The notes beneath the pieces are model-generated. The model saw nothing but the letters and a program-made list of their open reading frames with translations. It searched no databases and was not told where the DNA came from. Of a stretch of DNA of 64,000 nt, positions 1,829 to 57,465 are shown piece after piece (positions within the stretch are counted from its first letter, which is position 1; each line of letters begins with the position of its first letter). The position numbers and the translations under genes were made by a program. The stretch covers positions 175,087 through 239,086 of the forward strand of contig NIVC01001335.1 in the NCBI GenBank assembly GCA_002269645.1. Reading direction: 5' to 3'. The stretch is from Macrostomum lignano. Lineage: Eukaryota.

Positions 1829-14334
<12,506 letters not shown>

Positions 14335-17427: not shown

Positions 17428-17457
17428 TTGGTGAGCCCTACGCAGCCATTTCGTGCA

Positions 17458-21532: not shown

Positions 21533-22465
21533 ATATTGACTAAGGACTACTTCAGTAGAAGGACGCAACACTCGAAATCAGACTACCTGTGTATGTTTTG
21601 AAAGCCACTTTTTAGTGGCGTCATACGATGGGTAAATTGAAACAATAAACTGCTTAACTGACCTATTCATAAAATATATCGTTTAATTTAAATAAACTTT
21701 GTGGCTTAATATGCATGTCCGAGTATGTGCAAGTAAAGTATGATAAATTACAGAACAGGGTTACAAACTCGTTTACTTGAATAATATACTTTACTAAAGA
21801 GATTAGAGTTCCAGTATTTTTTCACAATATCTGCATTAAATAAATTAAAAAACAAGAAACATGTGAGAAAAAATTTCAACTACTAAGTGTCAACTACTTA
21901 TAGTGTATGGCATTTCTACTATTTGGACATCTCACTTTTGGCGAACTAATCAAGCACACATGCCACTCCAGGCTGATCTTACAAAGTGAACATTGAATTT
22001 AGCTGACAATGCAATGCATAGACGATGCATAGCTTCTAAAACAGTTTTTGTCTTCTTTACAAAAATATTTTACAAGACTGTAAACGCTGAAGCAAGAAAA
22101 TGTCTTCAATTCTGATCAACTGACCGGATCGACTCTGAGCATAATTTAATCGTTTTAAATGTTATACTCGAACATATTTATTTAGCAAAAGTAGCTAATT
22201 CAACTACTTCGAGTACAGCCGCAAAACATTTAAGCATATAAAAGCACCGCAGTATAAAGCAAATACAAGCTAATACTTTAGCCGAATTAGGTATAATATA
22301 AACACGGAACTTTTTAATTTAAAATCGGCGCCCACGAGCGTAAAATCATCAATAATCACTGGAGACGCAAAACGAAATGAAAGGTACTTGTATGCGTCCC
22401 GATTACCCACTGTTTCAGTGTCATTCTGAACATTTAAGCTGATTAAATGATTTTGTCAAACAGAC

Positions 22466-25824: not shown

Positions 25825-26420
25825 GGGAATTGCTAAGATGTCAAGGCTCATGTCTCATGATAGACATTCTTAGATGTCGTGTCAAGGCTCAAATTGCTTT
25901 GATGTTAAGGTTCATTAGGGAAATTGCTAAGATATCAAGGCTCATTAAAAATGCTTTGCTGTCAGTGTCAAGCCTCATGGAGATAATTACTGGAATGCTG
26001 TGGCTGTTGGGGGAATTGCCAACATTGTTAGGGTAAACCATAAATGAATTTGCGTTTCAAACATAAATTAATTGGGGAATTACTAAGATGTCAAGGCTCA
26101 TGGGGGAATCTGAATTATACTGTGGCTCAATGCTCAGGGGGAATTGTTGTGATTGCAACACATAGGGATATTGCCAAAATTTTGTCGCTCAAAAAGGAGT
26201 TGCTGAGATATCATGGCTCATTGGGGAATCGCTGAGATGTCAAAGCTAACGCGGATCCCTGTAATGCTGTAGGCTGTGACTCTTGGGTTATTGCTGAGAT
26301 GCTAAGGTTCACAGGGAAATGGCTGAGATTTCAAAGGCTCCTAAAAGAATAGCTGGAATTCACGAAATGTCAAGGTTAATTGGGTATTTGTTAAAATGCT
26401 CTGGTTCATAACTTCATGGT
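25825..26420. repeat. Old, degenerate tandem repeat (GGAATTGCTAAGATGTCAAGGCTCAT-like)
   Basis: Recurrent TGCT.AGAT.TCAAGGCTCA motif. Confidence 0.6.
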
Positions 26421-27679: not shown

Positions 27680-28163
27680 TTATTCGGGTGAAACCTCGTA
27701 CACGCTATTGAAATTTTCCCCGCCGCAGTGCTCATCCATGCTACCGGAGCACACCTGGCCGCAGTCCCTCTCCGTGCCCTGGCCGTGTTTGCCGAACGAG
27801 TTGCCGCACCAACATTCATCTCCCTGTATGCCCATGTAGGTTGTTGCCAACGGGGTGCACAACTTTTGGCACTGCTCAGCGTCCATTCTGTTAATTCGTA
27901 GGCCGCCGTATTCAGTAAAGTCACGGTTGAGCACCTCGTCCTTGAAGCAGCCGATGAGCTTTGGCTTCGGCACTACGATAGCTTTTTTTACTGTGGCTAC
28001 AATTTTGTTGGTAGGGAGTTGCGGATAGAAAATTAACTGATTCCAGCAAATGTAGGAACGAGTAGAGGAGGTCTAGCTACAACTCACAGGTGCAACAATC
28101 GCCAGCAGAAAATAAAACCGCAAAGCACACACAAACTGCGATGACGACGGCTCGAGTCACCAT
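27680..28163 (-). CDS. Small secreted WSC-domain protein. Exons: 28088-28163, 27680-27996
   Basis: Signal peptide MVTRAVVIAVCVCFAVLFSAG; phase-1 91-bp intron; WSC pattern GCF.D...C.K.C......G......C.CG.......C...C.G.....CGG. Confidence 0.88.
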
Positions 28164-29764: not shown

Positions 29765-32092
29765 ATGGGGTTGCAAAGAGTCACACCGAAACTGTTCTTG
29801 ATGCTGGCTTTATTCGCGTTTCTAGCCGTTGTCTCCGCGGTGCCATCGACGGATCAGTCTGTGACAGAAGAGGCTAACAACAGTTCTCAGCTGCCGCTCT
29901 GTCGAGAGCAATCGCGCAATCATGAACCAGCAACAAGCGTATGCCAAGCGTCAGCCTGTGTTGCACTGTCTGCCGCTGTTTCTAGCAAGATGAATTTCAG
30001 CGCAAATCCATGCGTTGACTTTTACAACTACGCATGCGGCAACTTTCCAGTGAACTACAAATACGACCCCGATGAGGTTTTCAAGTCATTAAAGCAAACT
30101 GGCCCGACCTTCTACCAGAACTCCTACTCTGTGATGCGAAATCAACTACGCAGCAATCTGTTCGAAGTGCTGATGCTGGACTGGGTAGTCAACAGCACGG
30201 ATCCGAAAGTTAGAGACTTGTACAACCTTACAAGGATGCTTTTTCGCAGTTGCACCAAATGGATGCGCTACAGATCCATGAAAAATGACACTGTTGCGGC
30301 TCAGCGTTTCTTCTCTAGCCTTCTTAAGCATCTTGTTGAAGCCATCAGTCCAAGACGGTATAATCGGACAATAGAATCAATCCTAGCCCGCATTGTGAAT
30401 ACGGATGTCCATACCATGTTTGATGTCCGCGTGCCCTCATCATACATTCGGGAGCTGAAGCGAGGCGACAGCAATAAGCTAAGAAAGGCTAGCAGAGTGG
30501 TTATTTCGGCAAGTACAAAGCTCTACCACTCAATGTCCAATTTCGAGCCCATATTAACATTTTTCAGTTCTATTGGCGGAGCGACTGTTCTGACCATCGC
30601 TAACGAGAGTTCCAGTTTCAGTCGAGTTCTAAAACAGATCCAGCAGTCCGAACGATACGCTAATTGGTCGGATGGCTGCAGCAAGCTTGCCAAGCAACAG
30701 CAGCACAAGATCCGTGATCTAGATACGCTTAGTCAATGTGCAAACCCAGCCGATCCATTTTCGTGGAGCCTATTCTTTGACGAGCTGCTTCAGTCTGACT
30801 ACGACCCCAATGCCTTGGTGGAGCTGGAGAATCCAAAGCGAGTAATTAACTTTTTGACGTACTTCAAAAAGAAATCAACATATTCAGCCAGTAGAAAGCT
30901 CTCCATCTACCAAAGCTTTCTTGTTGTTGACTGGCTGCTAAGTTTTGCGAGGTTCCTACCCATGCGTTTAGAGCGCATGTGGACTGAGTCCCCCCTGAGA
31001 GAAGATGTGATGGATAAAGCAGTGGGGGGACCGGTAGATGCATGCATGAAGCGCACTAAAGACTTGCTGTCTCCAGTAGTTGAGCGAATGTATCAGAAGG
31101 CCTACCATGCAGAGAACTTTGAGCATGTGCAGAATTTGATCGACCTCCTGGAGAATGCAACAGTTAACAGCGTGCTTAATCAGGACTGGATAGAGCCGGA
31201 TACAAAGGATCTTATTATTGAAAAGCTTCTGTCGCTCAAGCACACAATAGGGTTTGAGGTCTTGTCAGCCGACCAACTTTCTGCGTACTATTCGCCTGCT
31301 ATTAATTCCTTTCGAAAAGGCCGATATTCGAAAGTCTCAGTGGATAAGGATTTTGGCAGGTTGTTCTCCATTGCGCTCTGGGCATCAGCACGAAAAAAGT
31401 TCGGCGTGCTATCGACGGAAAACAGCTCGGCTACCACAGCCTTTCTCACTTTAAGTGGCCTTACAACTAATGCGTACAACTACATGCGGCGCAACGAGAT
31501 CGTGTTTCCCATGGGAATACTGTCGCCTCCGATGTACCATAGGGACTATCCTGACTACATGAACCTGGGCGGCCTGGGATTGGTTGTTGGTCATGAAATC
31601 GGTCACGCATTCGACATCAAAGGCCGCCAGCTCAGCAAGGAGGGCATCCATGGTAACCACTGGGACAACCGGACCACCGAGGAGTACCTGCGCCGGGTCG
31701 AATGCGTGCGCTCTCGATACGGCTCCTATGAGCTGGTGCCCGGCGTACCGCACGGCTCCAATACGACTCTGGGCAATGACATCGCTGATCTCCTTGGTCT
31801 GAACGCAGCTTTTGGTGCCATGCAATTACAGGGCGAGACTGGTCGCCGGTGGCAGCTGCCGAACCTGCCATCTGAACTGACGCCCGAGCGACTGTTCTTC
31901 GTTCAAGTGGCGCAGGCCTGGTGCACAAAGGCCGAGCCAGCGGCTCTAAAGCGGCGCTTCAAGAACATCAAGCACAGCCCGCCGCATCTGCGCGTTCGCG
32001 GAATGATGGAGAATAGCAAAGGATTTGCCCAAGTCTTCCAGTGCGGAGTCCGGCAGCCGATGAACCCGAGTGAAAAGTGCTCGTTTTGGTAA
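29765..32092 (+). CDS. Intronless M13 (neprilysin/ECE-like) zinc metallopeptidase with N-terminal signal peptide
   Basis: NPCVDFYNYACG, HEIGH, FFVQVAQAWC, HSPPHLR, C-terminal PMNPSEKCSFW. Confidence 0.95.
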   Translation: MGLQRVTPKLFLMLALFAFLAVVSAVPSTDQSVTEEANNSSQLPLCREQSRNHEPATSVCQASACVALSAAVSSKMNFSANPCVDFYNYACGNFPVNYKYDPDEVFKSLKQTGPTFYQNSYSVMRNQLRSNLFEVLMLDWVVNSTDPKVRDLYNLTRMLFRSCTKWMRYRSMKNDTVAAQRFFSSLLKHLVEAISPRRYNRTIESILARIVNTDVHTMFDVRVPSSYIRELKRGDSNKLRKASRVVISASTKLYHSMSNFEPILTFFSSIGGATVLTIANESSSFSRVLKQIQQSERYANWSDGCSKLAKQQQHKIRDLDTLSQCANPADPFSWSLFFDELLQSDYDPNALVELENPKRVINFLTYFKKKSTYSASRKLSIYQSFLVVDWLLSFARFLPMRLERMWTESPLREDVMDKAVGGPVDACMKRTKDLLSPVVERMYQKAYHAENFEHVQNLIDLLENATVNSVLNQDWIEPDTKDLIIEKLLSLKHTIGFEVLSADQLSAYYSPAINSFRKGRYSKVSVDKDFGRLFSIALWASARKKFGVLSTENSSATTAFLTLSGLTTNAYNYMRRNEIVFPMGILSPPMYHRDYPDYMNLGGLGLVVGHEIGHAFDIKGRQLSKEGIHGNHWDNRTTEEYLRRVECVRSRYGSYELVPGVPHGSNTTLGNDIADLLGLNAAFGAMQLQGETGRRWQLPNLPSELTPERLFFVQVAQAWCTKAEPAALKRRFKNIKHSPPHLRVRGMMENSKGFAQVFQCGVRQPMNPSEKCSFW

Positions 32093-33715: not shown

Positions 33716-35992
33716 ACAGATTTACATTCAGTGATGCAGTAAAACTAATTGGCTAAACACAAATTCGATCGATCGTCGATCGAAACTTAGGAAAAAATTC
33801 AACTCAAACTATTAGTTATAATGCATGCTTAATCATTTTCAACTTAACCAACCACAGTCAACCAGCTTAAACTATTTTCACATTTAGCTGTCTGTGCCAT
33901 ACTTTTCGTTGTAAAGGAAATCTATTGCAGATTTTGAAATCATTTTAAATTATACACTGTTGTATCAAAAGTGTCTAGATAGCTTTATTGTAATTTCGGT
34001 AATTTTTGGTAATCTTAACCAAAAAGCATTAAATAAGTTGCAGTTTTTGTTTTAGCTGTAAAAGTTTTTCGTGCCATATTTCAATTAATGGTCAGAGTAG
34101 TATATACTACTATAATAATATTGGATTTTTTAAAATTATATCAATATGCTTTTTAATTTTATAAAAAATAAAAATAAGAAACTTTCCTAAAGTTTAAACC
34201 AAAAAGGCCTAAAAACTTTTCTGGGCTTTTTAAAGATAGAAATGTTAGTGAAAAATTAGCATTTTAAGCCTAAACCCTCATTGAGCTTTTAAATATAAGA
34301 CCAAGAATAAAGAAAGGAAACCAAAAGTTATAAGAAACTTTAAAAAGTTACTAAAAAAGAAATAATCATTGTATTAATTATTACTAGTTTACTAGTTTAC
34401 TATTTACTAGTTTACTATTATTATTACTAATAATTACTAGAATATATCATTATCAGAAGCTTGCATTTCATTTTGTTTGCATACAGTTATATTTTTATTA
34501 AAGCTGCTTGATACATATAACTAATAATAACTACAAAACAAAATAGCTTTATTGTTTATTGTATGATATCAAACTGCAAACTACTATATTTTCAGCTCAT
34601 GGTGATTTAATTGCATAAACAAAAGCTGCAATGTATAGCTACTACACGTTGGTAGTTTGAATATGTTATGCACAATATCAGTATTAAGACTCCAATGTTG
34701 TTTATATTTATTAAATTATTAATAGTTAATATATTACAGTACAATTAGGATAGTACTAATTTTTGTATGTAAGATAATATAATATCAAGCGTCAATAGAA
34801 TAAATAGTACGAGTAAGTAAGTTTTGTATGTGAAAGTTTACAGTTACTCGCAGATAACGATAAGTAAAGCAAAGCAAAGAAATCGCGCATTTCTAAACTC
34901 CAGGAGTCCTGGTTAACCCTAAGCAGCTAGCACGTGCGCTAAATGTAAACCTCGAATCGAAAATGCAGAAAATAATTTGAAATTCGCGTTCTATCCTTTT
35001 CGCGGAACTATCTAAAACAAAACATATACTCCTTATAATTGAAAAAAGCAGATAACGTCAAAATTATAGCTTTTTAATTAAGCGGCTTATGAAATTTATA
35101 GTTTATATTTCCGTAAAATGTGCAAAGTCGTTAAAAAGACTGGCTTCTTCGCCATGACTTGTAGATTGCTTTGATAACAATGCCAAATTGGCCGTCTCGA
35201 ATTTAGCACCCGTATATACACGTTAGGCGGTATAGAACACGGCAAAAACCGCCTATAAAGCGGTCCGTGTCATGCTATATGATACGGTAGCATGCTATTG
35301 ATTGCCTTTTGTATGCGCACTTAGGCCCCAAAATGGCACCTTTTGGGGCCTAGCAAAATTTGGGGCTTTTGGGCCTTTTGGGGCTTTGCTGTTGTCTATA
35401 CGGCTGAATTTAGGCTAAGGTTTACACCGATATCAAGTAAATGTAAGCTATTAGATCACCCGACAGATGAAAAACATGACAGGAAAGTATAGAACTCGTA
35501 TTTTAACTGAAAAAATAGGAATCATAGGAAAACAGCTAGTGTAAACGTGAAATGTATTATTTTGTTGTGTACGAGCGTAATTACGTGCATTAGCGCTCAC
35601 TCGCCTCAGTTCCAAAGGAGTCACGGTTGCTGATGCTGCTGGAATCATGCCGGTAAGGTATGTGCATAATTAGTGCGATTATCTTCTCATGATTCTGTCG
35701 TTCTGAAATTGCACTGCGAGTACCTGCGGCCTGTTTTTTACCCTTAAGTATATCATTTGCTTTGTTTTGCCAATTTATTTTTTTAGTCAAAATGTCACCT
35801 TTGATACAGGTATTTTACACGCAAGTACATTTTAATTTCATTGTTGAGTTCGCTAAAATGTTTTTGGAGTTGTGTAAATTTATTTCCACATGCGGTTGAG
35901 ATCATACGAAAGTTTAGATTTCCAAATTCCGAGTAAGGGTAGAAGAATAAAACCGTTCGTTTAGAAATTATCTTTGTCAGTTTTAATAGCCG

Positions 35993-38900
35993 TCATTTCA
36001 TGACCACACCGCCAATGATGCCGCCTACAATGCAGATAAGCACGACCAACAGGCAGACCAGTAGAATGATCTTTTTCTGCAATCGGGGGTTGATAAATGC
36101 ACGTAATAACTAGTGAATGCACATGCCAACCATGCAGAAGTTTTCAGTTCAATCACCTTTCGAGCCTTGCTCTGATATTTGACGGCCTTTTTAGTGTCTC
36201 TCTTGGCAGCCTCGACATAGTCAACAGCCTGCTGCACGTTGTACTCGATCCGATCAACCATTTCACCCTGGCATGCATAAGAGGTCGTTGAATTTTTAAA
36301 GCAGATCAAATAAAATTCAAATAAACCTCATACCTGGCTCTCTACAAGCATGGCCATGTCTAGAAACATGTCGTGCAGCTCTTTGATGCTCTTTTCCAGT
36401 TTTATGATATCCTCGTGTCGGGCCTCAATGTCTGCCAGGGACTGCTTGGCCTGTTGAGTGTCGGTCATGATCTGCGGAAATAAAAAATAGTCTTATGTTT
36501 GGTTTGTAACCTTCGGGTTAGTTGGTAACCTTCGTATTTGATAACCTGGTTTATTGGTGACCTAGTTGAAAGCATTCTGGTAAGTTGGTAACCTGGTTAG
36601 TAACTTTCTGGTTGATAAACTTCTGGTTGGCGACTTTCTTGTTAGTGACTTTCTGGTTGGTGACTTTCTTGTTAGTGACTTTCTGGTTGGTGACTTTCTA
36701 GTTGGTGACTTTCTGGTTGGCGACTTTCTTGTTAGTGACTTTCTGGTTGGTGACTTTCTTGTTAGTGACTTTCTGGTTGGTGACTTTCTAGTTGGTGACT
36801 TTCTTGTTAGTGACTTTCTTGTTAATGACTTTCTGGTTGGTGACTTTCTTGTTAGTGACTTTCTGGTTGGTGACTTTCTTGTTAGTGACTTTCTGGTTGG
36901 TGACTTTCTTGTTAGTGACTTTCTTGTTAGTGACTTTCTTGTTAATGACTTTCTGGTTGGTGACTTTCTTGTTAGTGACTTTCTGGTTGGTGACTTTCTT
37001 GTTAGTGACTTTCTGGTTGGTGACTTTCTTGTTAGTGACTTTCTGGTTGGTGACTTTCTAGTTGGTGACTTTCTGGTTGGTGACTTTCTAGTTGGTGACT
37101 TTCTGTTTGGTGCTTTCTGTTTGGTGACCTTCTGGTTGGGGATCTTCTGGTTGGCAACCCTTGATTCGTCAAATTCAATCTGGTATCCGCCCTTGTTGGA
37201 ATCCATCCTAGATGTTACATCCGTTCTACATGTAAATGTTCTCAGTACACTTACTGCTGGTATCTATCCTAGCTGGTACATCCCCTAGCTGCTAACATCC
37301 CTAGCTGGTATACCTGGCTGCTCTCTTACCAGCAACCATCCTAGAGGCCAAAGTGCAACTTACTCCCTGGGTGAAGATGGCGAGGTTGCCGGATTCAATC
37401 ATTTCTTCCAGTTCAGCATCGGTTGTTTGCCGACCGGCTAAAATGGAAAAATATGAAGCGTTCTTTAATCTACTTTAAGTAAGAGTGGATGAATATTGAA
37501 CATTTTTTTGCTTTAATTTGCAGAAGCACTCTAATAATAGTTTACAAATATAGCATGTTCGAAGCAGAAAAAAGACAGACGAGCGGAAACATTTTCTTTT
37601 ATACCAGAAGAACGGGCCACAAGCAGCGGAAATAGCAAATATTTCTTCTAGCAGCAGAAATGAATTCTCAAAAAATTTTTCAAGCTCTGTAGTTCGCGAG
37701 CACTCAGTATTGTTGAAAAATGGCTGGGCGGCGCCTGTTAACAACAGAATGTGCTGCTCCAAAGCCACAAAAAGACATAAAAATAACAAAGCACCGTGCA
37801 ATGCAACAAACAATCAAGATTCGAGCGGGCACAAGCCTGAATGCTTCTCAAGCTCAAAGACACGAGCTCGCATAGCAGCTTTCTTACTGAGCGCTAAATG
37901 GCGAGAAATCTTCGCCTTGCAGCCCTGCCTGAAGGCGATCTGGCAGGCGTTGTAGCGGCTGATGGCGTCCACAAATTTGCGGGACAGCGTCAGGTGCTGG
38001 AATTGCGGTGGGTGCGGGCCGCGCTGCTCTGACTGACGGCTTCACTAGAGAAAGCTCTGCATGTCGGTAAGATCTGAGGGAGCTAAGGGAGAGATCTAAT
38101 GGTGAGAGATCTGATGCAGAGAGATCTGATGCAGAGAGATCTGATGCAGAGAGATCTGATGCAGAGAGATCTGATGCAGAGAGATCTGATGCAGAGAGAT
38201 CTGATGCAGAGAGATCTGATGCAGAGAGATCTGATGCAGAGAGATCTGATGCAGAGAGATCTGATGCAGAGAGATCTGATGCAGAGAGATCTGATGCAGA
38301 GAGATCTGATGCAGAGAGATCTGATGCAGAGAGATCTGATGCAGAGAGATCTGATGCAGAGGATCTGATGCAGAGAGATCTGATGCAGAGAGATCTGATG
38401 CAGAGAGATCTGATGCAGAGAGATCTGATGCAGAGAGATCTGATGCAGAGAGATCTGATGCAGAGAGATCTGATGCAGAGAGATCTGATGCAGAGAGATC
38501 TGATGCAGAGATCTGATGCAGAGAGATCTGATGCAGAGAGATCTGATGCAGAGAGATCTGATGCAGAGAGATCTGATGCAGAGAGATCTGATGCAGAGAG
38601 ATCTGATGCAGAGAGATCTGATGCAGAGAGATCTGATGCAGAGAGATCTGATGCAGAGAGATCTGATTCAGAGAGATCTGATGCAGAGAGATCTGATGCA
38701 GAGAGATCTGATGCAGAGAGATCTGATGCAGAGAGATCTGATGCAGAGAGATCTGATGCAGAGAGATCTGATGCAGAGAGATCTGATGCAGAGAGATCTG
38801 ATGCAGAGAGATCTGATGCAGAGAGATCTGATGCAGAGAGATCTGATGCAGAGAGATCTGATGCAGAGAGATCTGATGCAGAGAGATCTGATGCAGAGAG

Positions 38901-41900
38901 ATCTGATGCAGAGATCTGATGCAGAGAGATCTGATGCAGAGAGATCTGATGCAGAGAGATCTGATGCAGAGAGATCTGATGCAGAGAGATCTGATTCAGA
39001 GAGATCTGATGCAGAGAGATCTGATGGGGATCTGATGGGGATCTGATGCAGAGCGATCTGATGCAGAGAGATCTGATGCAGAGAGATCTGATGGGGATCT
39101 GATGGGGATCTGATGCAGAGAGATCTGATGGGGATCTGATGGGGATCTGATGGGGATCTGATGGGGATCTGATGGGGATCTGATGGGGATCTGATGGGGA
39201 TCTGATGGGGATCTGATGGGGATCTGATGGGGATCTGATGGGGATCTGATGCAGAGCGATCTAATGGTGAGAGATCTGATGCAGAGAGATCTGATGCAGA
39301 GAGATCTGATGCAGAGAGATCTGATGCAGAGAGATCTGATGCAGAGAGATCTGATTCAGAGAGATCTGATGCAGAGAGATCTGATGGGGATCTGATGCAG
39401 AGAGATCTGATGGGGATCTGATGGGGATCTGATGCAGAGCGATCTGATGCAGAGAGATCTGATGGGGATCTGATGCAGAGAGATCTGATGGGGATCTGAT
39501 GGGGATCTGATGGGGATCTGATGCAGAGAGATCTGATGGGGATCTGATGGGGATCTGATGCAGAGAGATCTGATGGGGATCTGATGGGGATCTGATGCAG
39601 AGAGATCTGATGGGGATCTGATGGGGATCTGATGCAGAGCGATCTGATGGGGATCTGATGCAGAGAGATCTGATGGGGATCTGATGCAGAGAGATCTGAC
39701 GGAGAAATCGGAGGGAGGAGATATGGAGAGAGGTCTGAGAGAGAGGTGGGAATGAGTTAGGTCTCTAAGATATCTGGGCAGCTTCTGAAAATGATTTAAA
39801 ATTTCACTTTCAACTGACAGTTTTGATTGGATTTTTCTGCAATCGGCTGTCGTGCAAATTAATAATGCAACGACAAGTCACTGGAAGTGAAGTGGGGCGT
39901 CACTCAACAAGCGGCCACATCGAATAGCGCAGTCAATCAAATTGAGGCTTCAGCAGTTTGGCACGCAGGCATTCAGTTCAGCCTGGTGCCTGCTGCAAGC
40001 TTTTTATGACGCTCTTCTGCCGCTCAGCGCCCCAGTGGGATTCCCAAGAAATCCCGCACTCTCCAAAAAACAGAAGCCAGCTTTTATACCTGTTATTGAG
40101 CCAGACGCAGATTCGGGTGAACACAAGGCTACTAAAATTATTTTTATGAAAAGACACTTTTCTAAATAATATTGTGCTTCGAAGAAAAATATGGGAGGGA
40201 CGCGGGATAAAACCATCAGCCACTGAGTTAAATCAAGTGTGTACAGAGAGATAAGAACCCGCAGCCACTGAGTTAAATCAAGTGTGTACAGAGAGATAAG
40301 AACCCGCAGCCATAGAGTTCAATCAAGTGTGTACAGAGAGATAAGAACCCGCAGCCACTGAGTTAAATCAAGTGTGTACAGAGAGATAAGAACCCGCAGC
40401 CATAGAGTTCAATCAAGTGTGTACAGAGAGATAAGAACCGGCAGCCACTGAGTTCAATCAAGTGTGTACAGAGAGATAAGAACCGGCAGCCACTGAGTTC
40501 AATCAAGTGTGTACAGAGAGATAAGAACCGGCAGCCACTGAGTTCAATCAAGTGTGTACAGAGAGATAAGAACCCGCAGCCATAGAGTTCAATCAAGTGT
40601 GTACAGAGAGATAAGAACCGGCAGCCACTGAGTTCAATCAAGTGTGTACAGAGAGATAAGAACCGGCAGCCACTGAGTTCAATCAAGTGTGTACAGAGAG
40701 ATAAGAACCGGCAGCCACTGAGTTCAATCAAGTGTGTACAGAGAGATAAGAACCGGCAGCCATAGAGTTCAATCAAGTGTGTACAGAGAGATAAGAACCC
40801 GTAGCCATAGAGTTCAATCAAGTGTGTACAGAGAGATAAGAACCGGCAGCCATAGAGTTCAATCAAGTGTGTACAGAGAGATAAGAACCCGCAGCCATAG
40901 AGTTCGATCAAGTGTGTACAGAGAGATAAGAACTGGCAGCCATAGAGTTCAATCAAGTGTGTACAGAGAGATAAGAACCCGCAGCCATAGAGTTCAATCA
41001 AGTGTGTACAGAGAGATAAGAACCCGCAGCCATAGAGTTCAATCAAGTGTGTACAGAGAGATAAGAACCCGCAGCCATAGAGTTCAATCAAGTGTGTACA
41101 GAGAGATAAGAACCGGCAGCCACTGAGTTCAATCAAGTGTGTACAGAGAGATAAGAACCGGCAGCCACTGAGTTCAATCAAGTGTGTACAGAGAGATAAT
41201 AACTGGCAGCCATAGAGTTCAATCAAGTGTGTACAGAGAGATAAGAACCCGCAGCCATAGAGTTCAATCAAGTGTGTACAGAGAGATAAGAACCGGCAGC
41301 CATAGAGTTCAATCAAGTGTGTACAGAGAGATAATAACTGGCAGCCATAGAGTTCAATAAAGTGTGTACAGAGAGATAAGAACCCGCAGCCATAGAGTTC
41401 AATCAAGTGTGTACAGAGAGATAAGAACCGGCAGCCATAGAGTTCAATCAAGTGTTTACAGAGAGATAAGAACCGGCAGCCATAGAGTTCAATAAAGTGT
41501 GTACAGAGAGATAAGAACCGGCAGCCATAGAGTTCAATCAAGTGTGTACAGAGAGATAATAACTGGCAGCCATAGAGTTCAATCAAGTGTGTACAGAGAG
41601 ATAAGAACCCGCAGCCATAGAGTTCAATCAAGTGTGTACAGAGAGATAAGAACCGGCAGCCATAGAGTTCAATCAAGTGTGTACAGAGAGATAAGAACCC
41701 GCAGCCATAGAGTTCAATCAAGTTTGTACAGAGAGATAAGAACCGGCAGCCATAGAGTTCATTTAATTGTGCACAGAGAGAGAAGAATTCATTAAAATTA
41801 ACCGCTTAACAATCGCACCAATAGGGGCCCAGTGTGCAACTTATATCTGGTAAATATTTTTCCTTCACCAGTGCCACCAGTCAGCACAGGAGTCTAGCCA

Positions 41901-43731
41901 AATCGAACTAATCCTCGGATTACTGATCTCCATCTGGCGTCTAATCCGAGCCTTGCAGCCGCCGCGGTACTCCAACTGGGCCCTGTTGTACTCGCTCATT
42001 GTCTCTATGAACTTTCGCGTGATTGTCGAGTGCTGCAAAGCAATAATGCTTTAATACTTTCTGATATTTGGGAGATTTTAGCTAAAGAATTTAAGCGAAA
42101 ATTTTTAAGAGGCTCTTGTGTTGGACTGAACGGGAAAGCCGATTAATTTCTTTCCTGTTTTTCTGTCAGAATCTGCAACAGTAAAAGCAGAAATTTACCT
42201 GGGTTTTGCGGATTCGCACGTCGGCTGTGGATCCACCGTCGGACAGCTCACTCTGCTCAAGACCCTGCTCAATGGCTGGAGATTCGATGGGAGTCGGTTG
42301 CTATGGGACCTGACTGTCAGCTGTTTATGAATGGGATAATGATCCAAATGAACTCTGGTGGAGGATAATGAACCCAATGAACTCTGGTGGGGGGATAATG
42401 ATCCCAATGATCTCTGGTGGGCGGGATAATGATCCCAATGAACTCTGTGGGTTACTGATCCCAATGAACTCTGTGGGTTAATGATCCCAATGAACTCTGG
42501 GGGTTAATGATCCCAATGAACTTCGGGGGGATAATGATCCCAATGAACTCTGGGGGTTAATGATCCCAATGAACTCTGGGGGTTAATGATCCCAATGAAC
42601 TTCGGGGGGATAATGATCCCAATGAACTCTGGGGGATAATGATCCCAATGAACTCTGGGGGATAATGATCCCAATGAACTCTGGGGGTTAATGATCCCAA
42701 TGAACTTCGGGGGGTTAATGAGCACCAATGAAATCTGGTTGGGGGATAATGATCCTAATGAGTGGCGGGGCGATAATGATCCCAATGAGCTCTGGGGGGA
42801 TGATGATCCCAATAAACAGTAGCCACGAACCTTTGAGCTTCATTCGCACTTTGTTAGCGTTGGTCTTGATGTCCTGCATCAGGACTTCAAGTTCTTCCTT
42901 TGTTTCTGCAACAAATAGATTTGGGTCCTGAATAATGAAGATTTGAAGCAGAAACTACTGCCTGCTCAATAGTGGGTGAATTCACTCCGATCAGTCAAGA
43001 GTCTAAAGAGTGATTTCACTCCGCAGAAACTCACTCTGGTCGTTGTTCGGCGAGGCCAGGATGTGCGAGTGCTTCATCCTGACGCTGCAGACGCTGGCTT
43101 CGATTTCGTTAATCAGGCGACGGACAGCGTCGACGTCAGCGAAAAAATCGTCCATGAAGCCTTCGGAGTTGCGCGGCCGCTGCCAGCGTTCGGGGTCTCC
43201 GCGCCTCCCCGGCTGATCGTCCGGTTCCATCGAAAAGTTCTCGTCGCCAAGCTCTTCTTCGTCTGGCACGATCTTAGCGCAAATTTGCAAGGCGCAAAAG
43301 AGTCCCACTGTGAGATAGTCCCATTGTGAGATAGTCCCACTGTCAGATAGTCCCATTGTCAGACAGTCCCATTGTCAGACAGTCCCATTGTCAGACAGTC
43401 CCATTGTCAGACAGTCCCATTGTCAGACAGTCCCATTGTCAGACAGTCCCATTGTCAGACAGTCCCATTGTCAGACAGTCCCATTGTCAGACAGTCCCAC
43501 TGTCAGATAGTCCCATTGTCAGATAGTCCCATTGTCAGATAGTCCCATTGTCAGACAGTCCCATTGTCAGACAGTCCCATTGTCAGACAGTCCCATTGTC
43601 AGACAGTCCCATTGTCAGACAGTCCCACTGTCGAGCAGTCGCACTGGTCAATCAGATGCAGTTCTCACCTGAGCAGCATCCTCCCCTAAAGCCATCGCCC
43701 GCCTCAGGTCTGGCAGTCTGTCTCGCGACAT
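35993..43731 (-). CDS. STX1: Syntaxin-1-like t-SNARE. Exons: 43669-43731, 43035-43272, 42831-42905, 42199-42275, 41924-42032, 37364-37437, 36334-36471, 36157-36267, 35993-36076
   Basis: MSRDRL N-peptide; FMDDFFADV...[10 protein letters not shown]; [12 protein letters not shown]; H3 SNARE motif [43 protein letters not shown]; [13 protein letters not shown] plus TM anchor. All introns are GT-AG and in phase. Confidence 0.97.
36600..37135. repeat. 15-bp minisatellite (GTGACTTTCTGGTTG / GTGACTTTCTTGTTA)n
   Basis: Lies in syntaxin intron 36472-37363. Confidence 0.95.
37888..37996 (-). CDS. STX1: Alternative (mutually exclusive) syntaxin Hc-helix exon, [36 protein letters not shown]
   Basis: 109 nt, phase 0 to 1, TTCCAG acceptor and A|GTAAGA donor. 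Same length and phase as, and homologous to, exon 41924-42032. Confidence 0.88.
38095..39700. repeat. 15-bp (AGAGATCTGATGCAG)n grading into 11-bp (GATCTGATGGG)n
   Basis: Read directly. Confidence 0.95.
40222..41760. repeat. 45-bp minisatellite, ~34 copies
   Basis: Unit AGTTCAATCAAGTGTGTACAGAGAGATAAGAACCGGCAGCCATAG; period 45 (for example 41041 to 41086). Confidence 0.95.
42340..42810. repeat. ~22-bp minisatellite (ATAATGATCCCAATGAACTCTGGGG-like)
   Basis: Fills intron 42276-42830. Confidence 0.9.
43301..43630. repeat. 16-bp minisatellite (AGTCCCATTGTCAGAC)n
   Basis: Fills intron 43273-43668. Confidence 0.95.
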
Positions 43732-44264
43732 TCTCAGACGATTCTGTTGAATATTTTGCAAGATTTTCTTTTTGCAGATTTTTTAGCAAATTATCCGCAA
43801 GGCCTCGCTGAAAGGAGTGAAGATTTAAACTGATTCTTAGAATTTTTGCTGTTTAAAATTCCGCCCAAACCGAAAATAACGACTGCGTGAGGACATTGCA
43901 CCGGAAATAAATATTGGATACTGTTTGTTTTATTATGAAGCGTTGGAAAAGCTTGAAAAAGTGTTTTATTGTCTGATTAAGGAAACAAACTGACATGATT
44001 AATTCCAGTCAAAAAAATTACCTTGAGCTCAAGCAGAACAATTTTTATTTATTAATATTAATATTTTTTACATGTAACAAACTTATTAACAGAGCTGTCC
44101 GGTTACCATAGTTATCGAGAATAAAGTCTCGAGATAAATTGTTAGGCTATGCTAAAAGTGTGAGACGCATTTAGTGATCATAAATCTCACAATCTTCACC
44201 TGACTGATTGGACTGAGACTTCTTGTGACATAAAAAACAGCTTTTAAACTCGAGCACAACACAC

Positions 44265-46138
44265 AAAATCCCAAAACACCCACGGAATCCCAAAACACCC
44301 ACGGAACCCCAAAACACCCACGGAACCCCAAAACACCCACGGAACCCCAAAACACCCACGGAACCCCAAAACACCCACGGAACCCCAAAACACCCACGGA
44401 ACCCCAAAACACCCACGGAACCCCAAAACACCCACGGAACCCCAAAACACCCACGGAACCCCAAAACACCCACGGAACCTCAAAACACCCACGGAACCCC
44501 AAAACACCCACGGAACCCCAAAACACCCACGGAACCCCAAAACACCCACGGAACCCCAAAACACCCACGGAACCCCAAAACACCCACGGAACCCCAAAAC
44601 ACCCACGGAACCCCAAAACACCCACGGAACCCCAAAACACCCACGGAACCCCAAAACACCCACGGAACCCCAAAACACCCACGGAACCCCAAAACACCCA
44701 CGGAACCCCAAAACACCCACGGATCCCAAAACACCCACGGATCCCAAAACACCCACGGGATCCCAAAACACCCACGGGATCCCAAAACACCCACGGAACC
44801 ACAAAACACCCATGGAATCTCAAAACACCCACGGGATCCCAAAACACCCACGGAACCCCAAAACACCCACGGAACCCCAAAACACCCACGGAACCACAAA
44901 ACACCCATGGAACCCCAAAACACCCACGGAACCCCAAAACACCCACGGGATCCCAAAACACCCACGGGATCCCAAAACACCCACGGATCCCAAAACACTC
45001 ACGGAACCCCAAAACACCCACGGAACCCCAAAACACCCACGGGATCCCAAAACACCCACGGAATCCCAAAACACCCACGGAATCCCAAAACACCCACGGA
45101 ACCCCAAAACACCCACGGAACCCCAAAACACCCACGGGATCCCAAAACACCCACGGAACCCCAAAACACCCACGGAACCCCAAAACACCCACGGAACCCC
45201 AAAACACCCACGGAACCCCAAAACACCCACGGAACCCCAAAACACCCACGGAACCCCAAAACACCCACGGAACCCCAAAACACCCACGGATCCCAAAACA
45301 CCCACGGGATCCCAAAACACCCACGGGATCCCAAAACACCCACGGAACCACAAAACACCCATGGAATCTCAAAACACCCACGGGATCCCAAAACACCCAC
45401 GGAACCCCAAAACACCCACGGAACCCCAAAACACCCACGGAACCACAAAACACCCATGGAACCCCAAAACACCCACGGAACCCCAAAACACCCACGGGAT
45501 CCCAAAACACCCACGGGATCCCAAAACACCCACGGATCCCAAAACACTCACGGAACCCCAAAACACCCACGGAACCCCAAAACACCCACGGGATCCCAAA
45601 ACACCCACGGAATCCCAAAACACCCACGGAATCCCAAAACACCCACGGAATCCCAAAACACCCACGGAACCCCAAAACACCCACGGAACCCCAAAACACC
45701 CACGGGATCCCAAAACACCCACGGAACCCCAAAACACCCACGGGATCCCAAAAGACCCACGGATCCCAAAACACTCACGGAACCCCAAAACACCCACGGG
45801 ATTCCAAAACACCCACGGGATCCCAAAACACCCACGGAATCCCAAAACACCCACGGAATCCCAAAACACCCACGGAATCCCAAAACACCCACGGAACCCC
45901 AAAACACCCACGGAACCCCAAAACACCCACGGAACCACAAAACACCCACGGAACCCCAAAACACCCACGGAACCCCAAAACACCCACGGGATTCCAAAAC
46001 ACCCACGGAACCCCAAAACACCCACGGAACCCCAAAACACCCACGGGATCCCAAAACACCCACGGAACCCCAAAACACCCACGGAACCCCAAAACACCCA
46101 CGGAATCCCAAAACACCCACGGAATCCCAAAACACCCA
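44265..46138. repeat. 19-bp minisatellite (CACGGAACCCCAAAACACC)n with higher-order block duplication
   Basis: Period 19. The rare variant CATGGAATCTC recurs at 44811 and 45360. Confidence 0.95.
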
Positions 46139-46819: not shown

Positions 46820-48322
46820 CTAGTTAGCTAGTTAGTTAGTTAGTTAGTTGGAATCTCATACAAGGCCCTTCAGCACCTCGGGCGGCAGGTGGCAGGAGCG
46901 GAGGCCCACTGGCAAGCGGGTTGTCGAACGGCCGCTCAGCATCTCCTGCGAGTAGCCAAAGTCGCACAGCCTCACGTGGCCGGTGGACGAGATGGCCACA
47001 TTGTCCGGCTTGAGGTCCAGGTGCAGCACGCCGAGCGAGTGCAGGAAGTCCAGCGCGCACGCCACCTCAGCCAAGTAGAAGGTGGTCTCGACCTCTTTGA
47101 AGCCTCTACCGATCTTGGCGAGGCCCTTCAGCAGGCTGTGCAGCGTCCCGCCGGTAGCCAGCTCCAGCAGCAGGCAGCCGTAGGAGCCGCCCGTTCGGGG
47201 GTTTTTGCACAGCAGGAAGTCCTCCATCCACAGCACGAAGCCAGGGTGTTGGACGTCCTCCGAGCGGCCCTGCTGCAGCCTGCGGTAGATTTTCCACTCG
47301 GTCTCGCACTGGCGCAGCCACTTGCTGCACTTCAACGCCCTTGGCGACGCGTCCAGTTTGAAGCCAGCGGCATTCACGCAGCCTTCGGCCAGCCGCCGCA
47401 CCCGGCAGAAGTGCACGCTGCCCGAGCAGCCGGAGCCCAGGCGGAAAGTCGCCTCGAGCACCATCGACCGATTTGCGGCGAATATCTTCTGGCAAGAAGT
47501 CGCTTTGTCGCTGCTTCGCTGCGGCTTCCCGTGGCAGACCGACTTGAAAAAGGTCGGCGACCAGAGCCGCGGCAGACAGCCACACCGGCTGAGCAGGCAG
47601 GCGAGGAGGCCGCGGGCTGCCAGGCCGTCCGGAGCGCCCGGCGTCAGTACAGAGGCGTCCCGGACGTCGAGGAACCGCGCCCGCAGGCGGCTGCCGCGGG
47701 TGACCCGGGAGGCCGGCGTGGCCGAGCCGCCGCCGCTGCCGGAGCTGCCGTCGAAGTCGGACGCGGCGGCGCGTTGCGAAACGACGCGGCTGCTGCCGGG
47801 TGGCTGCGGCGAGCGCGGGCGGAGCGGCAGGCTGGCAGGCGGGCGGCTCGTCTTCGCCGACCAGACCGGGTAGCCGGGCGACGGCGGCGCGAAAAGCTGA
47901 GCCGACGGCGGCGTCGTTTTTGACGCCTCCGAGACGCGTCGTTGTGGCGAAGCCGAGCAGCTTCGAGCGCGAGACGCCTGCGGCGGCGGAGGGGCCAGAC
48001 GCGATGAAGCTCGGGATCCCGGAAGCTGGAGAGCCACTGAGTTCCGCTGCACACCCAGACCCCGGTCCGACCGGGCTCTCGGAGACTCCGGAGACGGCGC
48101 GACTCTTGTCGCACAGCCGATGGCGCTGGAGCTGGTGCTGATCGTCACCGTCAGCTGAATTTTGGCGAACTCGGCGCCGAGGCTGCTCGCATTGGCGGCG
48201 CTGTGTTCAGCTGGCGGATGGCCCGAGCTCTGCTCGATCGTCACTGGCACGTCGGATGACACCAAGATGGTTACCATGGTTACTCTGCTTGCCGGCCCCC
48301 GCTCGCTTGTTTCCAAGGACAT
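46246..48322 (-). CDS. Divergent Ser/Thr protein kinase (AGC/CAMK-like, non-RD). Exons: 46862-48322, 46246-46620
   Basis: LGSGCSG loop, ALK lysine, LELATGG, HLDLKPDN, DFG, LPPE, and DWFSYG after a phase-0 intron filled by (TTAG)n. Confidence 0.9.
46650..46850. repeat. (TTAG)n microsatellite
   Basis: Fills the kinase intron. Confidence 0.95.
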
Positions 48323-54233: not shown

Positions 54234-56964
54234 ATGTGCCGGTCTGCCGCCAGCCTGCCAGCTCGTCCTAGCCTCTCCATGCTCATCTCCCTAATGCTGC
54301 TACAGCAGCTTCTGCTGGCGGCTCACTGCCGCCAGCAGCTGTTCTGTCGCGACGGCGTCTTCAACTTGGCCATCGTGCAGAATTCTGAGTTCAACTGCCT
54401 GGCCAGCGCCGAGGCGGAGTTTCCCATCACGGAGGCGCAGTTCTTGCGAGGACTCGCCGTCCACTTTGCTGTCGACAGAATCAACAGGGAGCAGCTGCGC
54501 CCGGAGCTGCGCGCACGTGGATGGACGTTCGGCTTCGTCCATTTGGACCCCTGCATGTCGTCAGCCGCAGCCGTCAGTCTGACGAAGAACCTGCGCCCTG
54601 CCTGGCAGCACGGCGCCCTTGCAGCCGGAGGCGCCTTCTGCTCTCAGCGGCTCAGCGGCATCGAGGAGTCGGTCTATCTCATTCAGGCCGCTGCGGCCGC
54701 CTGGTACAGCAGCACCACGGACATCGTGTCACGTCTGCTGTCGCCCTACCAGCTGCCGCAGGTGTCCACCGAGTCCAGCAGCGACGCGTTCTCGGACCGG
54801 GAGCGGTACCCGAACGTCTACCGGCTGGTGTCACCGGATCGCCACCAGGCCAGAGCCGCGGTGCAGCTGGTGCGCCACTTCGGCTGGACCTACGTGGCCA
54901 TCATCCACAGAGACGACGTGTACGGGAGGGGCCTCGCGCACAACACCAGGCTCCTACTGGCTGCAGCACCGAGCGAAGGAGGCAACTCCAGCGAATCCGC
55001 TGCACCGGTGTGCGTTGCCTTCACCCTGGCGTTGAACCAGCTCACTTCCGTATCCGACGCGCTGGACGCCATCGACTCTCGGCAAAACTTGACCGTGTTT
55101 CTCGTGTACGAACTATTCAGCCTGGTGCCCGACAGGCTGCTTGCCCGCATCGCCTCCCGCGGTGGCACCATCATCACCTCCGACACGAACGCCGATTCGT
55201 ACAAAGACTACACTCGGGGCGCCTTCTACGTAGCCTTTCCGCAGTTTCCCGTGCCAGACTTGCTCCGCTTTTACCACTCGTTGAACCTCGCCCAGCTGGT
55301 GGAGTTCCCGTTCGGCTTTCAGCTGCAGAAGGTTCTCTCCGTTGGCAATTGCACAGCTGCTGGCAACGTCACATCAGCTGGGTGCAGTGCCAAGGTCGCC
55401 TCTCTGTCGCGTTTAAGCCTCAACGTTAAAGTGGCTCCGCTGGCTCGCATGCTGGACTCGCTGACGCTCATCGCCGACAGCGTCCAATCGGTCGCCCTAA
55501 GCGAAGAGTGTCAGCCGAGCGTCGCAGAGGGAAACCTCAGCCAGCTACTCAGCTGCATCACTGGCCCTCGAATTTCCACCCTCATTGCTGCGTCAAATTT
55601 TTCAACAACAGCTCGCCGGCATTTTATCGCTGACTTTGACGGCTTCGACTCCAGCGGCGATGCCGCGCCTGCCTACGACGTGCGCCGCGAGGAAGCCGAC
55701 AGCGAGCTCAAATTGTTCGCCCGATGGACGCAGCGCTCCAGCCTGAGGGTTTGGGACAACGAAACTGCCGCACCGGCGGCCTCGTTCTGCAGCCCGCCCT
55801 GCCCAGCCGGCCACATCCGGGTGCCCAGCGACGCCTGCTGCTTCACCTGCCGCGCCTGCTTCCCGGGCGAAATCGCCGGTTCGGACGGCCTCGCCTGCCT
55901 GCCCTGCCCAACGTTCCTCTGGCCAGAGGCCGAGACCTGCCAGCGGTTGCCTGTCGCCGGCTGGAACGAAGATCTCCTGCTGCCGGGGCTCCTGGTGTGC
56001 GCGGCCCTCCTGGCCACACTGACACTGACTGCGCTGCTGTTGCTGCTGCACCGGCGGGAGCATCGGCTAGTCAAGGCGTCCTCGGTGCAGCTGTCGGTAA
56101 GACTGGTGGCATTTGTTAGTGTGGAACTCGAACTACCATTTTAAATTGTTTCCGACAGGTGGCCTGCCTTTGCGGCAGCCTTCTCGGTCTGTCCGGCCTG
56201 GCACCCATCGCAGTTGAGGCTTCCGACGTCGCCTGCTGCTGCGCGAACGCCGCCACCCAGCTGGGCCTGTCGGTTTGCTACTGCAGCCAGCTGGTGAAGA
56301 CACTGCGCATCCTGCTGGTGTTCAGAGCGTCCGGGGCGGGCCGGCCGACGCCGCAGTTGGCAAGGCAGCGCCCGATTTCTGCGATGCTGGCTGGTCTCGT
56401 CCTGCTGATGGTGAGGCATGGGGATCTGGGATGCTGACCGGCCTTATCAACCCAACAACTACCTGTCCATTTATACAAAACATTGCAGACTGGCATCATC
56501 ATTGGGCTCAGTCTCCGCTGGCCCGTGCAGTCGCGCATCCGTCAGTCGGCCTCGACAACGTCTGACTCAAAGCCGTGGGTGGAGCGGCAGTGCGACCTCA
56601 TGACCGTCAGCTTCTGGGCTCCGCTAGGCTGCAACTTGACCCTACCGGTATTGGGCACCACCTGCCTGCTGGCGCTGCGGACCCGTCAACTGCCCGACAA
56701 TTTTCACGACAGCAAGTGCATCCTGGCGGCCGGCGCCTCCGCGCTCTTCCTCTGGGCGGCATTCACCCGGCTGCGTTGACGGCAACCACATTGGCCACCG
56801 CCGTCAAGTTGATGGTGTTCTCTTGCGTGCTGACCCACGGTCTGCTGCTGGCCATCATGTTCGCGCCGAAGCTTTACGCAGCCTACGCCGTGCCAGAGGC
56901 GCAGTGCAACGTCAAGTTCTACACCGCCAATAACGGCGTATCTTGCAGCAACGAGATGGCCTGA
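54234..56964 (+). CDS. Class C GPCR (mGluR/CaSR/taste-receptor-like: Venus flytrap, nine-cysteine domain, 7TM). Exons: 54234-56096, 56159-56410, 56489-56964; one -1 lesion near 56765
   Basis: PQVS...SDRERYPN..R, FGWTYVAII...DVYG, nine-Cys CSPPC...CCFTCRAC...CLPC...C, LVKAS, LVKTLRI, RQLPDNFHDSKCI and FAPKLY. The start may be ATG 54279. Confidence 0.93.

Positions 56965-56994: not shown

Positions 56995-57465
<471 letters not shown>

What the first reader, a model, noticed from the sequence alone, without database searches (positions are those of the whole stretch)
37888..42032. Duplicated, mutually exclusive Hc-helix exon in syntaxin-1
Seen: two homologous 109-nt exons, A (41924-42032, [36 protein letters not shown]) and B (37888-37996, [36 protein letters not shown]). 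Both are phase 0 to 1 with good splice sites and no stops despite heavy divergence, which implies selection. Including both or neither shifts the frame. B is absent from the ORF track. Established: this segment forms the Habc Hc helix that packs on the H3 SNARE motif and contacts Munc18 in the closed state. Inference: two isoforms with different open/closed equilibrium. I know of no described mutually exclusive exon pair at this position.
Basis: partly seen in the sequence, partly recalled or inferred. Interest (0 to 1): 0.75.

Follow-up and report, generated by a model that had tools for sequence, protein, structure and literature searches.

The report
Conserved alternative exon pair in flatworm syntaxin-1
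A flatworm (Macrostomum lignano) syntaxin-1 gene carries two interchangeable 109-base versions of one exon, a pair that is conserved across flatworms, annelids, brachiopods, nemerteans and molluscs and is already modelled in other species' annotations, so it is real and old but not a new kind of thing.

Summary
On the minus strand lies a nine-exon syntaxin-1-like gene (35993-43731). Exon 5 occurs twice, as A (42032-41924) and B (37996-37888). Each copy is 109 nt with AG/GT sites, and using both or neither shifts the frame.

The window is Macrostomum lignano: its only database protein for this locus uses A, and B is unannotated.

B is not a chance ORF. A second M. lignano paralog keeps the same pair in the same order. 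Between the paralogs B has dN/dS of about 0.16, against about 0.12 for A, and similarity stops at the exon borders.

The same two exon types, "type 2" upstream and "type 1" downstream, lie side by side in Dimorphilus and Lingula. They separate RefSeq isoforms of Lineus, Octopus and Dreissena, and two cDNA contigs of one unidentified species. B is the canonical type, like the vertebrate, insect and Aplysia exon. A is the type found in squid s-syntaxin (PDB 1S94).

The exon encodes rat Stx1A H120-I155, which is the distal Hc helix plus the start of the linker, including the Munc13-binding residues R151/I155.

No M. lignano transcript data could be reached, so splicing of B here remains inferred, and any functional difference between the isoforms is untested. 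I found no paper describing the pair.

The parts
35993..43731 (-). Syntaxin-1-like gene of Macrostomum lignano, nine coding exons, 322 aa with either exon-5 copy
   Evidence: Exon model assembled from splice sites and homology. Pfam Syntaxin PF00804 (E = 1.6e-34 with B, 7.3e-37 with A) and SNARE PF05739. The best solved-structure matches are all Syntaxin-1A (E = 1.5e-92). UniRef protein P0028 of M. lignano is an exact substring of the A isoform, residues 127-322.
42199..42275 (-). Exon 4 ([26 protein letters not shown]). Its donor at 42199 must choose between the acceptor of A and that of B.
   Evidence: Single copy in the window.
41924..42032 (-). Exon 5A, 109 nt, [36 protein letters not shown]. 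This is 'type 2', the spiralian-specific form also found in squid s-syntaxin, and it is the exon used in the existing protein model.
   Evidence: It carries the type-2 residue at 5 of 6 diagnostic positions. P0028 contains it. PDB 1S94 squid s-syntaxin carries the type-2 exon.
37997..41923 (-). Intron between A and B, 3927 nt, mostly two minisatellite arrays (38089-39699 with a 15-nt unit; 40206-41787 with a 45-nt unit)
   Evidence: No inverted repeats that could act as docking/selector pairs, apart from matches inside the satellites. No Rfam match in 35000-45000.
37888..37996 (-). Exon 5B, 109 nt, [36 protein letters not shown]. This is 'type 1', the canonical form shared with molluscan, insect and vertebrate syntaxin-1. 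It is unannotated.
   Evidence: It carries the type-1 residue at 5 of 6 diagnostic positions and no type-2 residue. It is 25/36 identical to the unannotated type-1 exon of paralog locus L002 (27998-28106), with dN 0.18 and dS 1.17. Only the exon is conserved between the two loci.
37364..37437 (-). Exon 6 (completes the Thr codon, then [24 protein letters not shown]). Common acceptor for A and B.
   Evidence: Both frameshifted products (A+B, or neither) reach a stop codon inside this exon.

Best explanation
Exons A and B are the two members of an old, tandemly duplicated alternative exon 5 of syntaxin-1, inherited from an early spiralian ancestor.

How it works. The donor of exon 4 joins either A or B, and the chosen exon then joins exon 6. 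Each copy is 109 nt, which is not a multiple of 3. A transcript with both or neither is therefore frameshifted and stops in exon 6, three junctions before the end, so only single-inclusion mRNAs can make syntaxin. This part is shown by the sequence. Removal of the faulty mRNAs by nonsense-mediated decay is inferred.

The products. The two proteins differ at 20 of 36 residues, in the distal Hc helix and the first turn of the Habc-H3 linker (rat Stx1A 120-155). B is the canonical version. A is the spiralian-specific version.

Function. The likely role is to give cells two syntaxin-1 forms that differ in how readily the closed, Munc18-bound state is opened, for example by Munc13, whose binding residues R151/I155 lie in this exon. 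This is inferred, not tested.
For: Anatomy:
- Same length, same phases, AG/GT sites, frame kept only by single inclusion.

Conservation within M. lignano:
- Paralog locus L002 (60% identical protein) has a type-2 exon followed 1.7 kb later by an unannotated 109-nt type-1 exon with a tttgcag/gtaagg frame. It shares the unusual CKAKI.RHLAL tail with B.
- dN/dS is about 0.16 for B against about 0.12 for A, and both are 25/36 identical between the paralogs.
- Between the two loci, DNA similarity covers only the exon.

Conservation across phyla:
- Type-2-then-type-1 pairs of 109 nt each occur in Dimorphilus (annelid) and Lingula (brachiopod) genomes.
- Isoform pairs of Lineus, Octopus and Dreissena, and the cDNA contigs P0049/P0110, differ only inside these 36 residues.
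- Six diagnostic positions sort every sequence into two classes, with B in type 1 and A in type 2.

Region:
- The alignment to Stx1A structures and the R151/I155 MUN-binding site (PMC8728020).
Against: - No transcript or protein containing B from M. lignano was found. Neither full-length isoform is in the 15-billion-protein collection, and the only model of this locus uses A.
- B replaces three residues that are invariant in 31 other syntaxin-1 sequences (M131I, Y141F, I155L). It also has more radical changes than A (D/E133R, D140A).
- Two other M. lignano paralog loci (L001, L010) have lost the type-1 exon without trace, so loss does happen in this genome.
- Lymnaea keeps only type 1.
- The dN/dS value integrates both lineages since the paralogs split, so it cannot exclude recent inactivation.
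- No functional difference between the isoforms was tested.
Confidence: 0.75

Rival explanations
1. B is a relic. The pair was a working alternative exon pair in the ancestor, but in this fast-evolving paralog B is no longer spliced and is starting to decay. The gene would then make only the A isoform.
For: - Only the A form is modelled (P0028), and no B-containing protein exists in the collection.
- B changes three otherwise invariant residues and has several charge-changing substitutions.
- Paralogs L001 and L010 have lost type 1 completely.
Against: - Length, frame and both splice sites are intact.
- The number of window-specific amino-acid changes is about the same for A (about 9) and B (about 10) when each is compared with its own type consensus and the L002 copy. 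I counted these by hand from the sequences printed.
- dN/dS is 0.16.
- The flanking intron has diverged beyond recognition while the exon has not.
- The absence of transcripts says little, because the reachable collection appears to hold no RNA-derived Macrostomum proteins at all. The clusters of P0024, P0027 and P0028 hold only NCBI/UniRef genome models.
Confidence: 0.17
2. Chance or artefact. B would be a fortuitous open frame, or a fragment of a pseudogene or retrocopy, that only resembles exon 5.
For: A 36-codon frame without stops is not rare by itself. The surrounding intron is repetitive.
Against: - tblastn gives E = 4e-8 against human STX1A within 64 kb.
- Exact length and phase match A, with canonical splice sites.
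- Neighbouring exons E4 and E6 are not duplicated, so it is not a retrocopy or segmental copy.
- An orthologous exon sits in the same position in L002, Dimorphilus and Lingula.
- No competing long ORF on either strand.
Confidence: 0.01
3. The pair is spliced, but mainly as a dosage switch. Regulated double inclusion or double skipping would produce frameshifted, degraded mRNA and so lower syntaxin output, and the protein difference between A and B would be secondary.
For: - Both non-productive patterns give premature stops in exon 6.
- An annotated M. lignano model (P0141, PAA71003.1) is exactly such an exon-5-skipped, frameshifted product, in a locus that still has the type-2 exon.
Against: - A dosage switch would not require two coding versions to be kept under purifying selection, with type-specific residues conserved across phyla.
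- P0141 may be an annotation artefact.
Confidence: 0.07

Closest known systems
Exon-5 isoform pairs of spiralian syntaxin in NCBI gene models (Lineus longissimus X2/X5, Octopus vulgaris, Dreissena polymorpha X1/X2)
   Same: It is the same exon, with the same 36-residue extent and the same two sequence types. The isoforms differ nowhere else. In the genomes I could read (Dimorphilus, Lingula, M. lignano L002) the order is type 2 then type 1, as in the window.
   Different: In M. lignano the type-1 copy is unannotated. The window gene is a divergent extra paralog (about 60% identical to P0024/P0027), and both of its exon copies have drifted further from the type consensus. I could not read the Lineus, Octopus or Dreissena loci themselves, because the look-ups found no record.
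SNAP-25 exon 5a/5b (vertebrates)
   Same: A tandem exon duplication in a neuronal plasma-membrane SNARE that gives two mutually exclusive variants of one protein segment (abstract of PMC2581893, seen).
   Different: It is a different gene and a different region, and it arose in vertebrates rather than spiralians. For SNAP-25 the functional difference has been shown genetically in mice, whereas here none has been tested.
Alternative C-terminal exons of syntaxins (C. elegans unc-64 exon 8a/8b; also seen in the spiralian isoform lists)
   Same: Alternative splicing of a syntaxin-1 gene that gives neuron-type-specific isoforms (PMC4946901). Lineus, Mya and Mytilus models likewise vary in the transmembrane exon.
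   Different: Those events swap the membrane anchor, not the Habc/linker region. The window gene has only one transmembrane exon and one exon 8.
Rat syntaxin-1A closed conformation with Munc18-1 (PDB 3C98) and squid s-syntaxin Habc (PDB 1S94)
   Same: They give the structural frame. Exon 5 corresponds to residues 120-155. Rat Stx1A has a type-1-like exon and squid s-syntaxin has the type-2 exon.
   Different: These are single isoforms from different species. No study compares the two exon types within one species.

Membership tests
Syntaxin-1 family (plasma-membrane Qa-SNARE) | Habc (Syntaxin N-terminal) domain and SNARE motif | tested here: met
   PF00804 at 119-127 bits and PF05739 at 71 bits, for both isoforms.
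Syntaxin-1 family (plasma-membrane Qa-SNARE) | Closest relatives are syntaxin-1 rather than other syntaxins | tested here: met
   The top solved structures are all Syntaxin-1A, E = 1.5e-92. The best database hits are proteins named syntaxin or syntaxin-1A, at 56-69% identity. No formal phylogeny against syntaxin 2/3/4 was made.
Syntaxin-1 family (plasma-membrane Qa-SNARE) | N-terminal Munc18-binding peptide (DRL motif), zero-layer Gln, C-terminal membrane anchor | tested here: met
   Read from the model: MSRDRLPDL at the start, LVESQGEM aligned to Stx1A, and [27 protein letters not shown] at the end. Binding itself was not tested.
Mutually exclusive exon pair from tandem exon duplication | Two adjacent homologous exons of the same length and phase with their own splice sites | tested here: met
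   109 nt each, phase 0 to 1, AG/GT sites, 16/36 identical residues, nothing but intron between them.
Mutually exclusive exon pair from tandem exon duplication | Only single inclusion gives a functional reading frame | tested here: met
   A+B or neither gives a frameshift with a stop in exon 6.
Mutually exclusive exon pair from tandem exon duplication | Both copies kept by selection in other genomes | tested here: met
   M. lignano L002, Dimorphilus and Lingula loci. dN/dS is 0.12-0.16.
Mutually exclusive exon pair from tandem exon duplication | Transcripts of this gene contain exactly one of the two, and each is used | not testable with these tools
   No M. lignano RNA data were reachable, and the isoA and isoB sequences are absent from the collection. 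Shown only in other species: cDNA contigs P0049/P0110 and the RefSeq isoform pairs.
Mutually exclusive exon pair from tandem exon duplication | A dedicated exclusion mechanism (competing RNA pairing, steric hindrance, or incompatible spliceosome types) | tested here: not met
   No candidate docking/selector inverted repeats. The A-B intron is 3.9 kb, so steric hindrance is ruled out. All sites are GT-AG. That leaves exclusivity by reading frame plus regulated exon choice, which does not disqualify the pair.
Spiralian syntaxin exon-5 type-1/type-2 cluster | Type-specific residues at positions 1, 2, 4, 9, 18, 34 (H/Y, A/S, L/I, V/I, C/A, L/M) and gene order type 2 then type 1 | tested here: met
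   B scores 1.1111 and A scores 122222. A lies upstream of B.

The most novel reading that the evidence does not exclude
Spiralian animals share an alternative exon pair in syntaxin-1, more than 500 million years old and never described in the literature, that swaps the distal Hc helix and the Munc13-binding start of the linker.

On this reading the classical 'squid syntaxin' (type 2) and 'Aplysia syntaxin' (type 1) are alternative isoforms of one orthologous gene. The two forms differ in how easily Munc18-bound closed syntaxin is opened. In Macrostomum, gene duplication then let some copies keep the switch (the window gene and L002) while others froze as type-2-only (L001, L010).
Probability: 0.4. 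Interest if true: 0.6.

Novelty: new member of a known kind. Interest (0 to 1): 0.45.

Why it matters
Syntaxin-1 opening is the gating step of synaptic vesicle priming. It has been probed mostly with artificial mutants (LE, RI). A natural, selected pair of Hc/linker variants within one gene would be a ready-made tool for asking which residues set the closed/open balance and Munc13 dependence, and which cells need which setting.

It also means that comparisons between squid, Aplysia and leech syntaxins in the older literature may have compared different isoforms rather than species differences.

For M. lignano annotation, it adds a missing coding exon in at least two syntaxin genes.

Tried and rejected
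- Fragment search with E4+B+E6. It returned only 22 short genomic ORF fragments, all arthropod or vertebrate type 1, and was uninformative about B.
- Exact look-up of the full-length A and B isoforms. Neither is in the collection.
- Any B-containing protein of about 190 aa or more would have outscored P0028, and the clusters of P0027 and P0028 hold one member each. The collection therefore evidently lacks Macrostomum RNA-derived proteins.
- Look-ups of RefSeq isoforms of Lineus, Octopus and Ptychodera found no record, so gene order in those species was not read.
- Inverted-repeat search for docking/selector RNA pairing found only satellite matches.
- Rfam on 35000-45000 found nothing.
- Search for a decayed type-1 exon in L001 at protein and DNA level found none.
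- Search for other duplicated exons, or extra transmembrane exons, in the window found none.
- P0061, a type-1 cDNA with a Macrostomum-like H3 region, turned out no closer to Macrostomum (74%) than to molluscs or nemerteans (79%). It is not flatworm evidence.
- Nine literature searches found no paper on an Hc/linker alternative exon in syntaxin-1. Subscription-only papers are not covered.
Full report
**What is in the window**

The minus strand between 35993 and 43731 carries a nine-exon gene whose product is a syntaxin-1 family protein.
- I fixed the boundaries from the splice sites: E1 43731-43669 (MSRDRLPDL...), E2 43272-43035, E3 42905-42831, E4 42275-42199, exon 5 in two copies, E6 37437-37364, E7 36471-36334, E8 36267-36157, and E9 36076-35993 (membrane anchor and stop).
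- With either exon-5 copy the product is 322 aa. It matches Pfam Syntaxin and SNARE, and its best solved relatives are all Syntaxin-1A (E = 1.5e-92).

**The observation**

Exon A (42032-41924) and exon B (37996-37888) are each 109 nt. Both begin in phase 0 after an AG and end one base into a codon before a GT.
- A and B share 16 of 36 residues.
- Using both, or neither, shifts the frame and gives a stop in exon 6.
- The match of B to syntaxin is not chance (E = 4e-8 in 64 kb).
- B is not part of a retrocopy or segmental copy, because no other exon of the gene is duplicated.
- Nothing else explains the B region. There is no longer ORF on either strand and no Rfam family.
- The 3927-nt intron between A and B is mostly two minisatellites.

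**Source organism**

A full-length search returned P0028, a UniRef protein of Macrostomum lignano. It is an exact substring of the A isoform, residues 127-322.
- The window is therefore M. lignano or something indistinguishable from it.
- The gene is a divergent extra paralog. The two more canonical M. lignano syntaxin-1 proteins, P0024 and P0027, are about 60% identical to it.

**Is B a real exon? Evidence within the genome**

I fetched the loci of the paralogs from assembly GCA_002269645.1.

In the P0027 locus (L002):
- The annotated exon 5 ([36 protein letters not shown]) lies at 26146-26254.
- It is followed 1.7 kb later by an unannotated 109-nt exon at 27998-28106. That exon is framed by tttgcag and gtaagg and encodes [36 protein letters not shown].
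- This exon shares the unusual ending CKAKI.RHLAL with window exon B.

Comparing the two loci:
- A and B are each 25/36 identical to their L002 counterparts.
- Nei-Gojobori estimates are dN 0.18 and dS 1.17 for B, and dN 0.18 and dS 1.58 for A. That gives ratios of about 0.16 and 0.12.
- At the DNA level the only similarity around B is the exon itself plus a few bases on each side.

That is the signature of selection on a coding exon, not of a neutral remnant.

By contrast, two further paralog loci (L001 and L010) have only the upstream type and no trace of the other. So loss does occur in this genome, and when it does it leaves nothing recognisable.

**Evidence across phyla**

Among the 120 best database hits, the 36 residues after RIRKTQ fall into two sharply separated classes in spiralians:
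- "type 1": [36 protein letters not shown]
- "type 2": [36 protein letters not shown]

NCBI isoform pairs of Lineus longissimus, Octopus vulgaris and Dreissena polymorpha differ only inside these 36 residues. So do two roughly 1-kb cDNA contigs of one unidentified species, P0049 and P0110.

I read three further genomic loci:
- Dimorphilus gyrociliatus has type 2 at 4999-5107 and type 1 at 5846-5954.
- Lingula anatina has type 2 at 21962-22070 and type 1 at 22345-22453.
- All of these are 109 nt with AG/GT sites, and all are in the same order as in the window.
- Lymnaea has only type 1.
- A myriapod locus has a single exon.

Six diagnostic positions classify every sequence. B is type 1 at five of the six and type 2 at none. 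A is type 2 at five of the six.

Insect, hemichordate and vertebrate sequences are type-1-like. The crystallised squid s-syntaxin (PDB 1S94) carries type 2.

**What the exon encodes**

By alignment to Stx1A the exon is H120-I155.
- From established structural knowledge, Hc runs to about residue 144. The exon therefore covers the distal two thirds of Hc and the first part of the Habc-H3 linker.
- The linker residues R151 and I155 are the reported binding site for the Munc13-1 MUN domain, which opens syntaxin (PMC8728020).
- In B, R151 is kept, I155 is Leu, E154 is Ala and Q152 is His. The last three changes are shared with the L002 type-1 exon.
- B alone also changes M131, Y141 and I155, which are invariant in 31 other syntaxin-1 sequences, all conservatively.

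**Mechanism**

Shown:
- Two competing acceptors lie downstream of one donor, and the frame tolerates only single inclusion.

Inferred:
- Faulty double or zero inclusion is cleared by nonsense-mediated decay.
- Exon choice is regulated by trans-acting factors. I found no RNA pairing elements, the intron is too long for steric exclusion, and all sites are GT-AG.
- Both alternative acceptors have poorer pyrimidine tracts (10 and 12 of 18) than the neighbouring constitutive exons E6 and E7 (15 and 14 of 18). This fits regulated exons, but the sample is tiny.

Not tested:
- Whether the two proteins differ in Munc18 binding, closed/open balance or Munc13-dependent opening.

**What is missing**

I found no RNA evidence from M. 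lignano.
- The exact isoforms are not in the protein collection.
- A B-containing protein would have topped, and none did.
- The relevant clusters hold only genome-derived models, so this absence says little.

**Comparison and novelty**

The closest known thing is the same exon pair in other spiralians' NCBI models. The window adds a flatworm member whose type-1 exon is unannotated.

In kind it resembles SNAP-25 exon 5a/5b (PMC2581893). It differs from the known syntaxin splicing events, which swap the membrane anchor (unc-64 exon 8a/8b, PMC4946901).

Nine literature searches found no description of an Hc/linker alternative exon in syntaxin-1. Subscription journals are not covered.

I rate it a new member of a known kind, of moderate interest. 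The pair is real, old and unstudied, but it is neither a new mechanism nor unknown to databases.

Noticed in passing
L010:16209-16317 (M. lignano NIVC01001189.1) and protein P0141 / PAA71003.1: This paralog locus has the type-2 exon 5 in the genome, yet its annotated product joins exon 4 directly to exon 6 (...RIRKTQLAGTSRTKTWRT, frameshifted, 146 aa). The model skips exon 5 in a locus that has no type-1 exon. It is either a real non-productive transcript or an annotation artefact.
   Followed up: partly
L001 (NIVC01002116.1) and L010, intron after exon 5: Two M. lignano syntaxin-1 paralogs, both next to a BTB-Kelch gene, keep only the type-2 exon. The 4-kb downstream intron holds no recognisable type-1 remnant. 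After gene duplication some copies lost the switch while the window gene and L002 kept it.
   Followed up: yes
L008:15271-24403 (Lingula anatina LFEI02000153.1): The block of exon 3, exon 4, type-2 exon and type-1 exon is present twice, with identical exon sequences. This is either an assembly duplication or a very recent tandem duplication.
   Followed up: no
window 36593-37154, 38089-39699, 40206-41787, 42333-42817, 43301-43632, 44270-46000+: Nearly every intron of the syntaxin gene, and the region upstream of it, is filled with minisatellite arrays (units of 15, 15, 45, 26, 16 and 19 nt). They cause the strong local GC/AT skews in the composition profile.
   Followed up: no
window 17383-20652 (+): A 1089-codon open frame with reverse transcriptase, RNase H and integrase zinc-binding domains. 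It is the pol of an LTR retrotransposon, apparently intact over this stretch.
   Followed up: partly
window 29765-32092 (+): An uninterrupted 775-aa ORF with both Peptidase M13 (neprilysin-like) domains. It appears to be an intronless gene lying about 4 kb downstream of the syntaxin gene's 3' end, on the opposite strand.
   Followed up: no
window 46856-48322 (-), 54234-56144 (+), 60381-61424 (+): Long exons or ORFs with a protein kinase domain fragment, a family-3 GPCR ligand-binding region (ANF_receptor + NCD3G) and a cytochrome P450 fragment. These are the neighbouring genes of the locus.
   Followed up: no
window ~57040-57480: A long GTN trinucleotide run that translates as poly-Val on the minus strand.
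   Followed up: no
Proteins P0032, P0036, P0037, P0040, P0041, P0073 (Lineus longissimus isoforms): Besides exon 5, the Lineus models vary in the exon after the SNARE zero layer (GEMIDRIEYNVEQSVDYIETAKMD... versus GEMIDRVEYNVEQSVNYVETAVAD...) and in four different membrane-anchor exons. One syntaxin gene there has three variable exon clusters.
   Followed up: no
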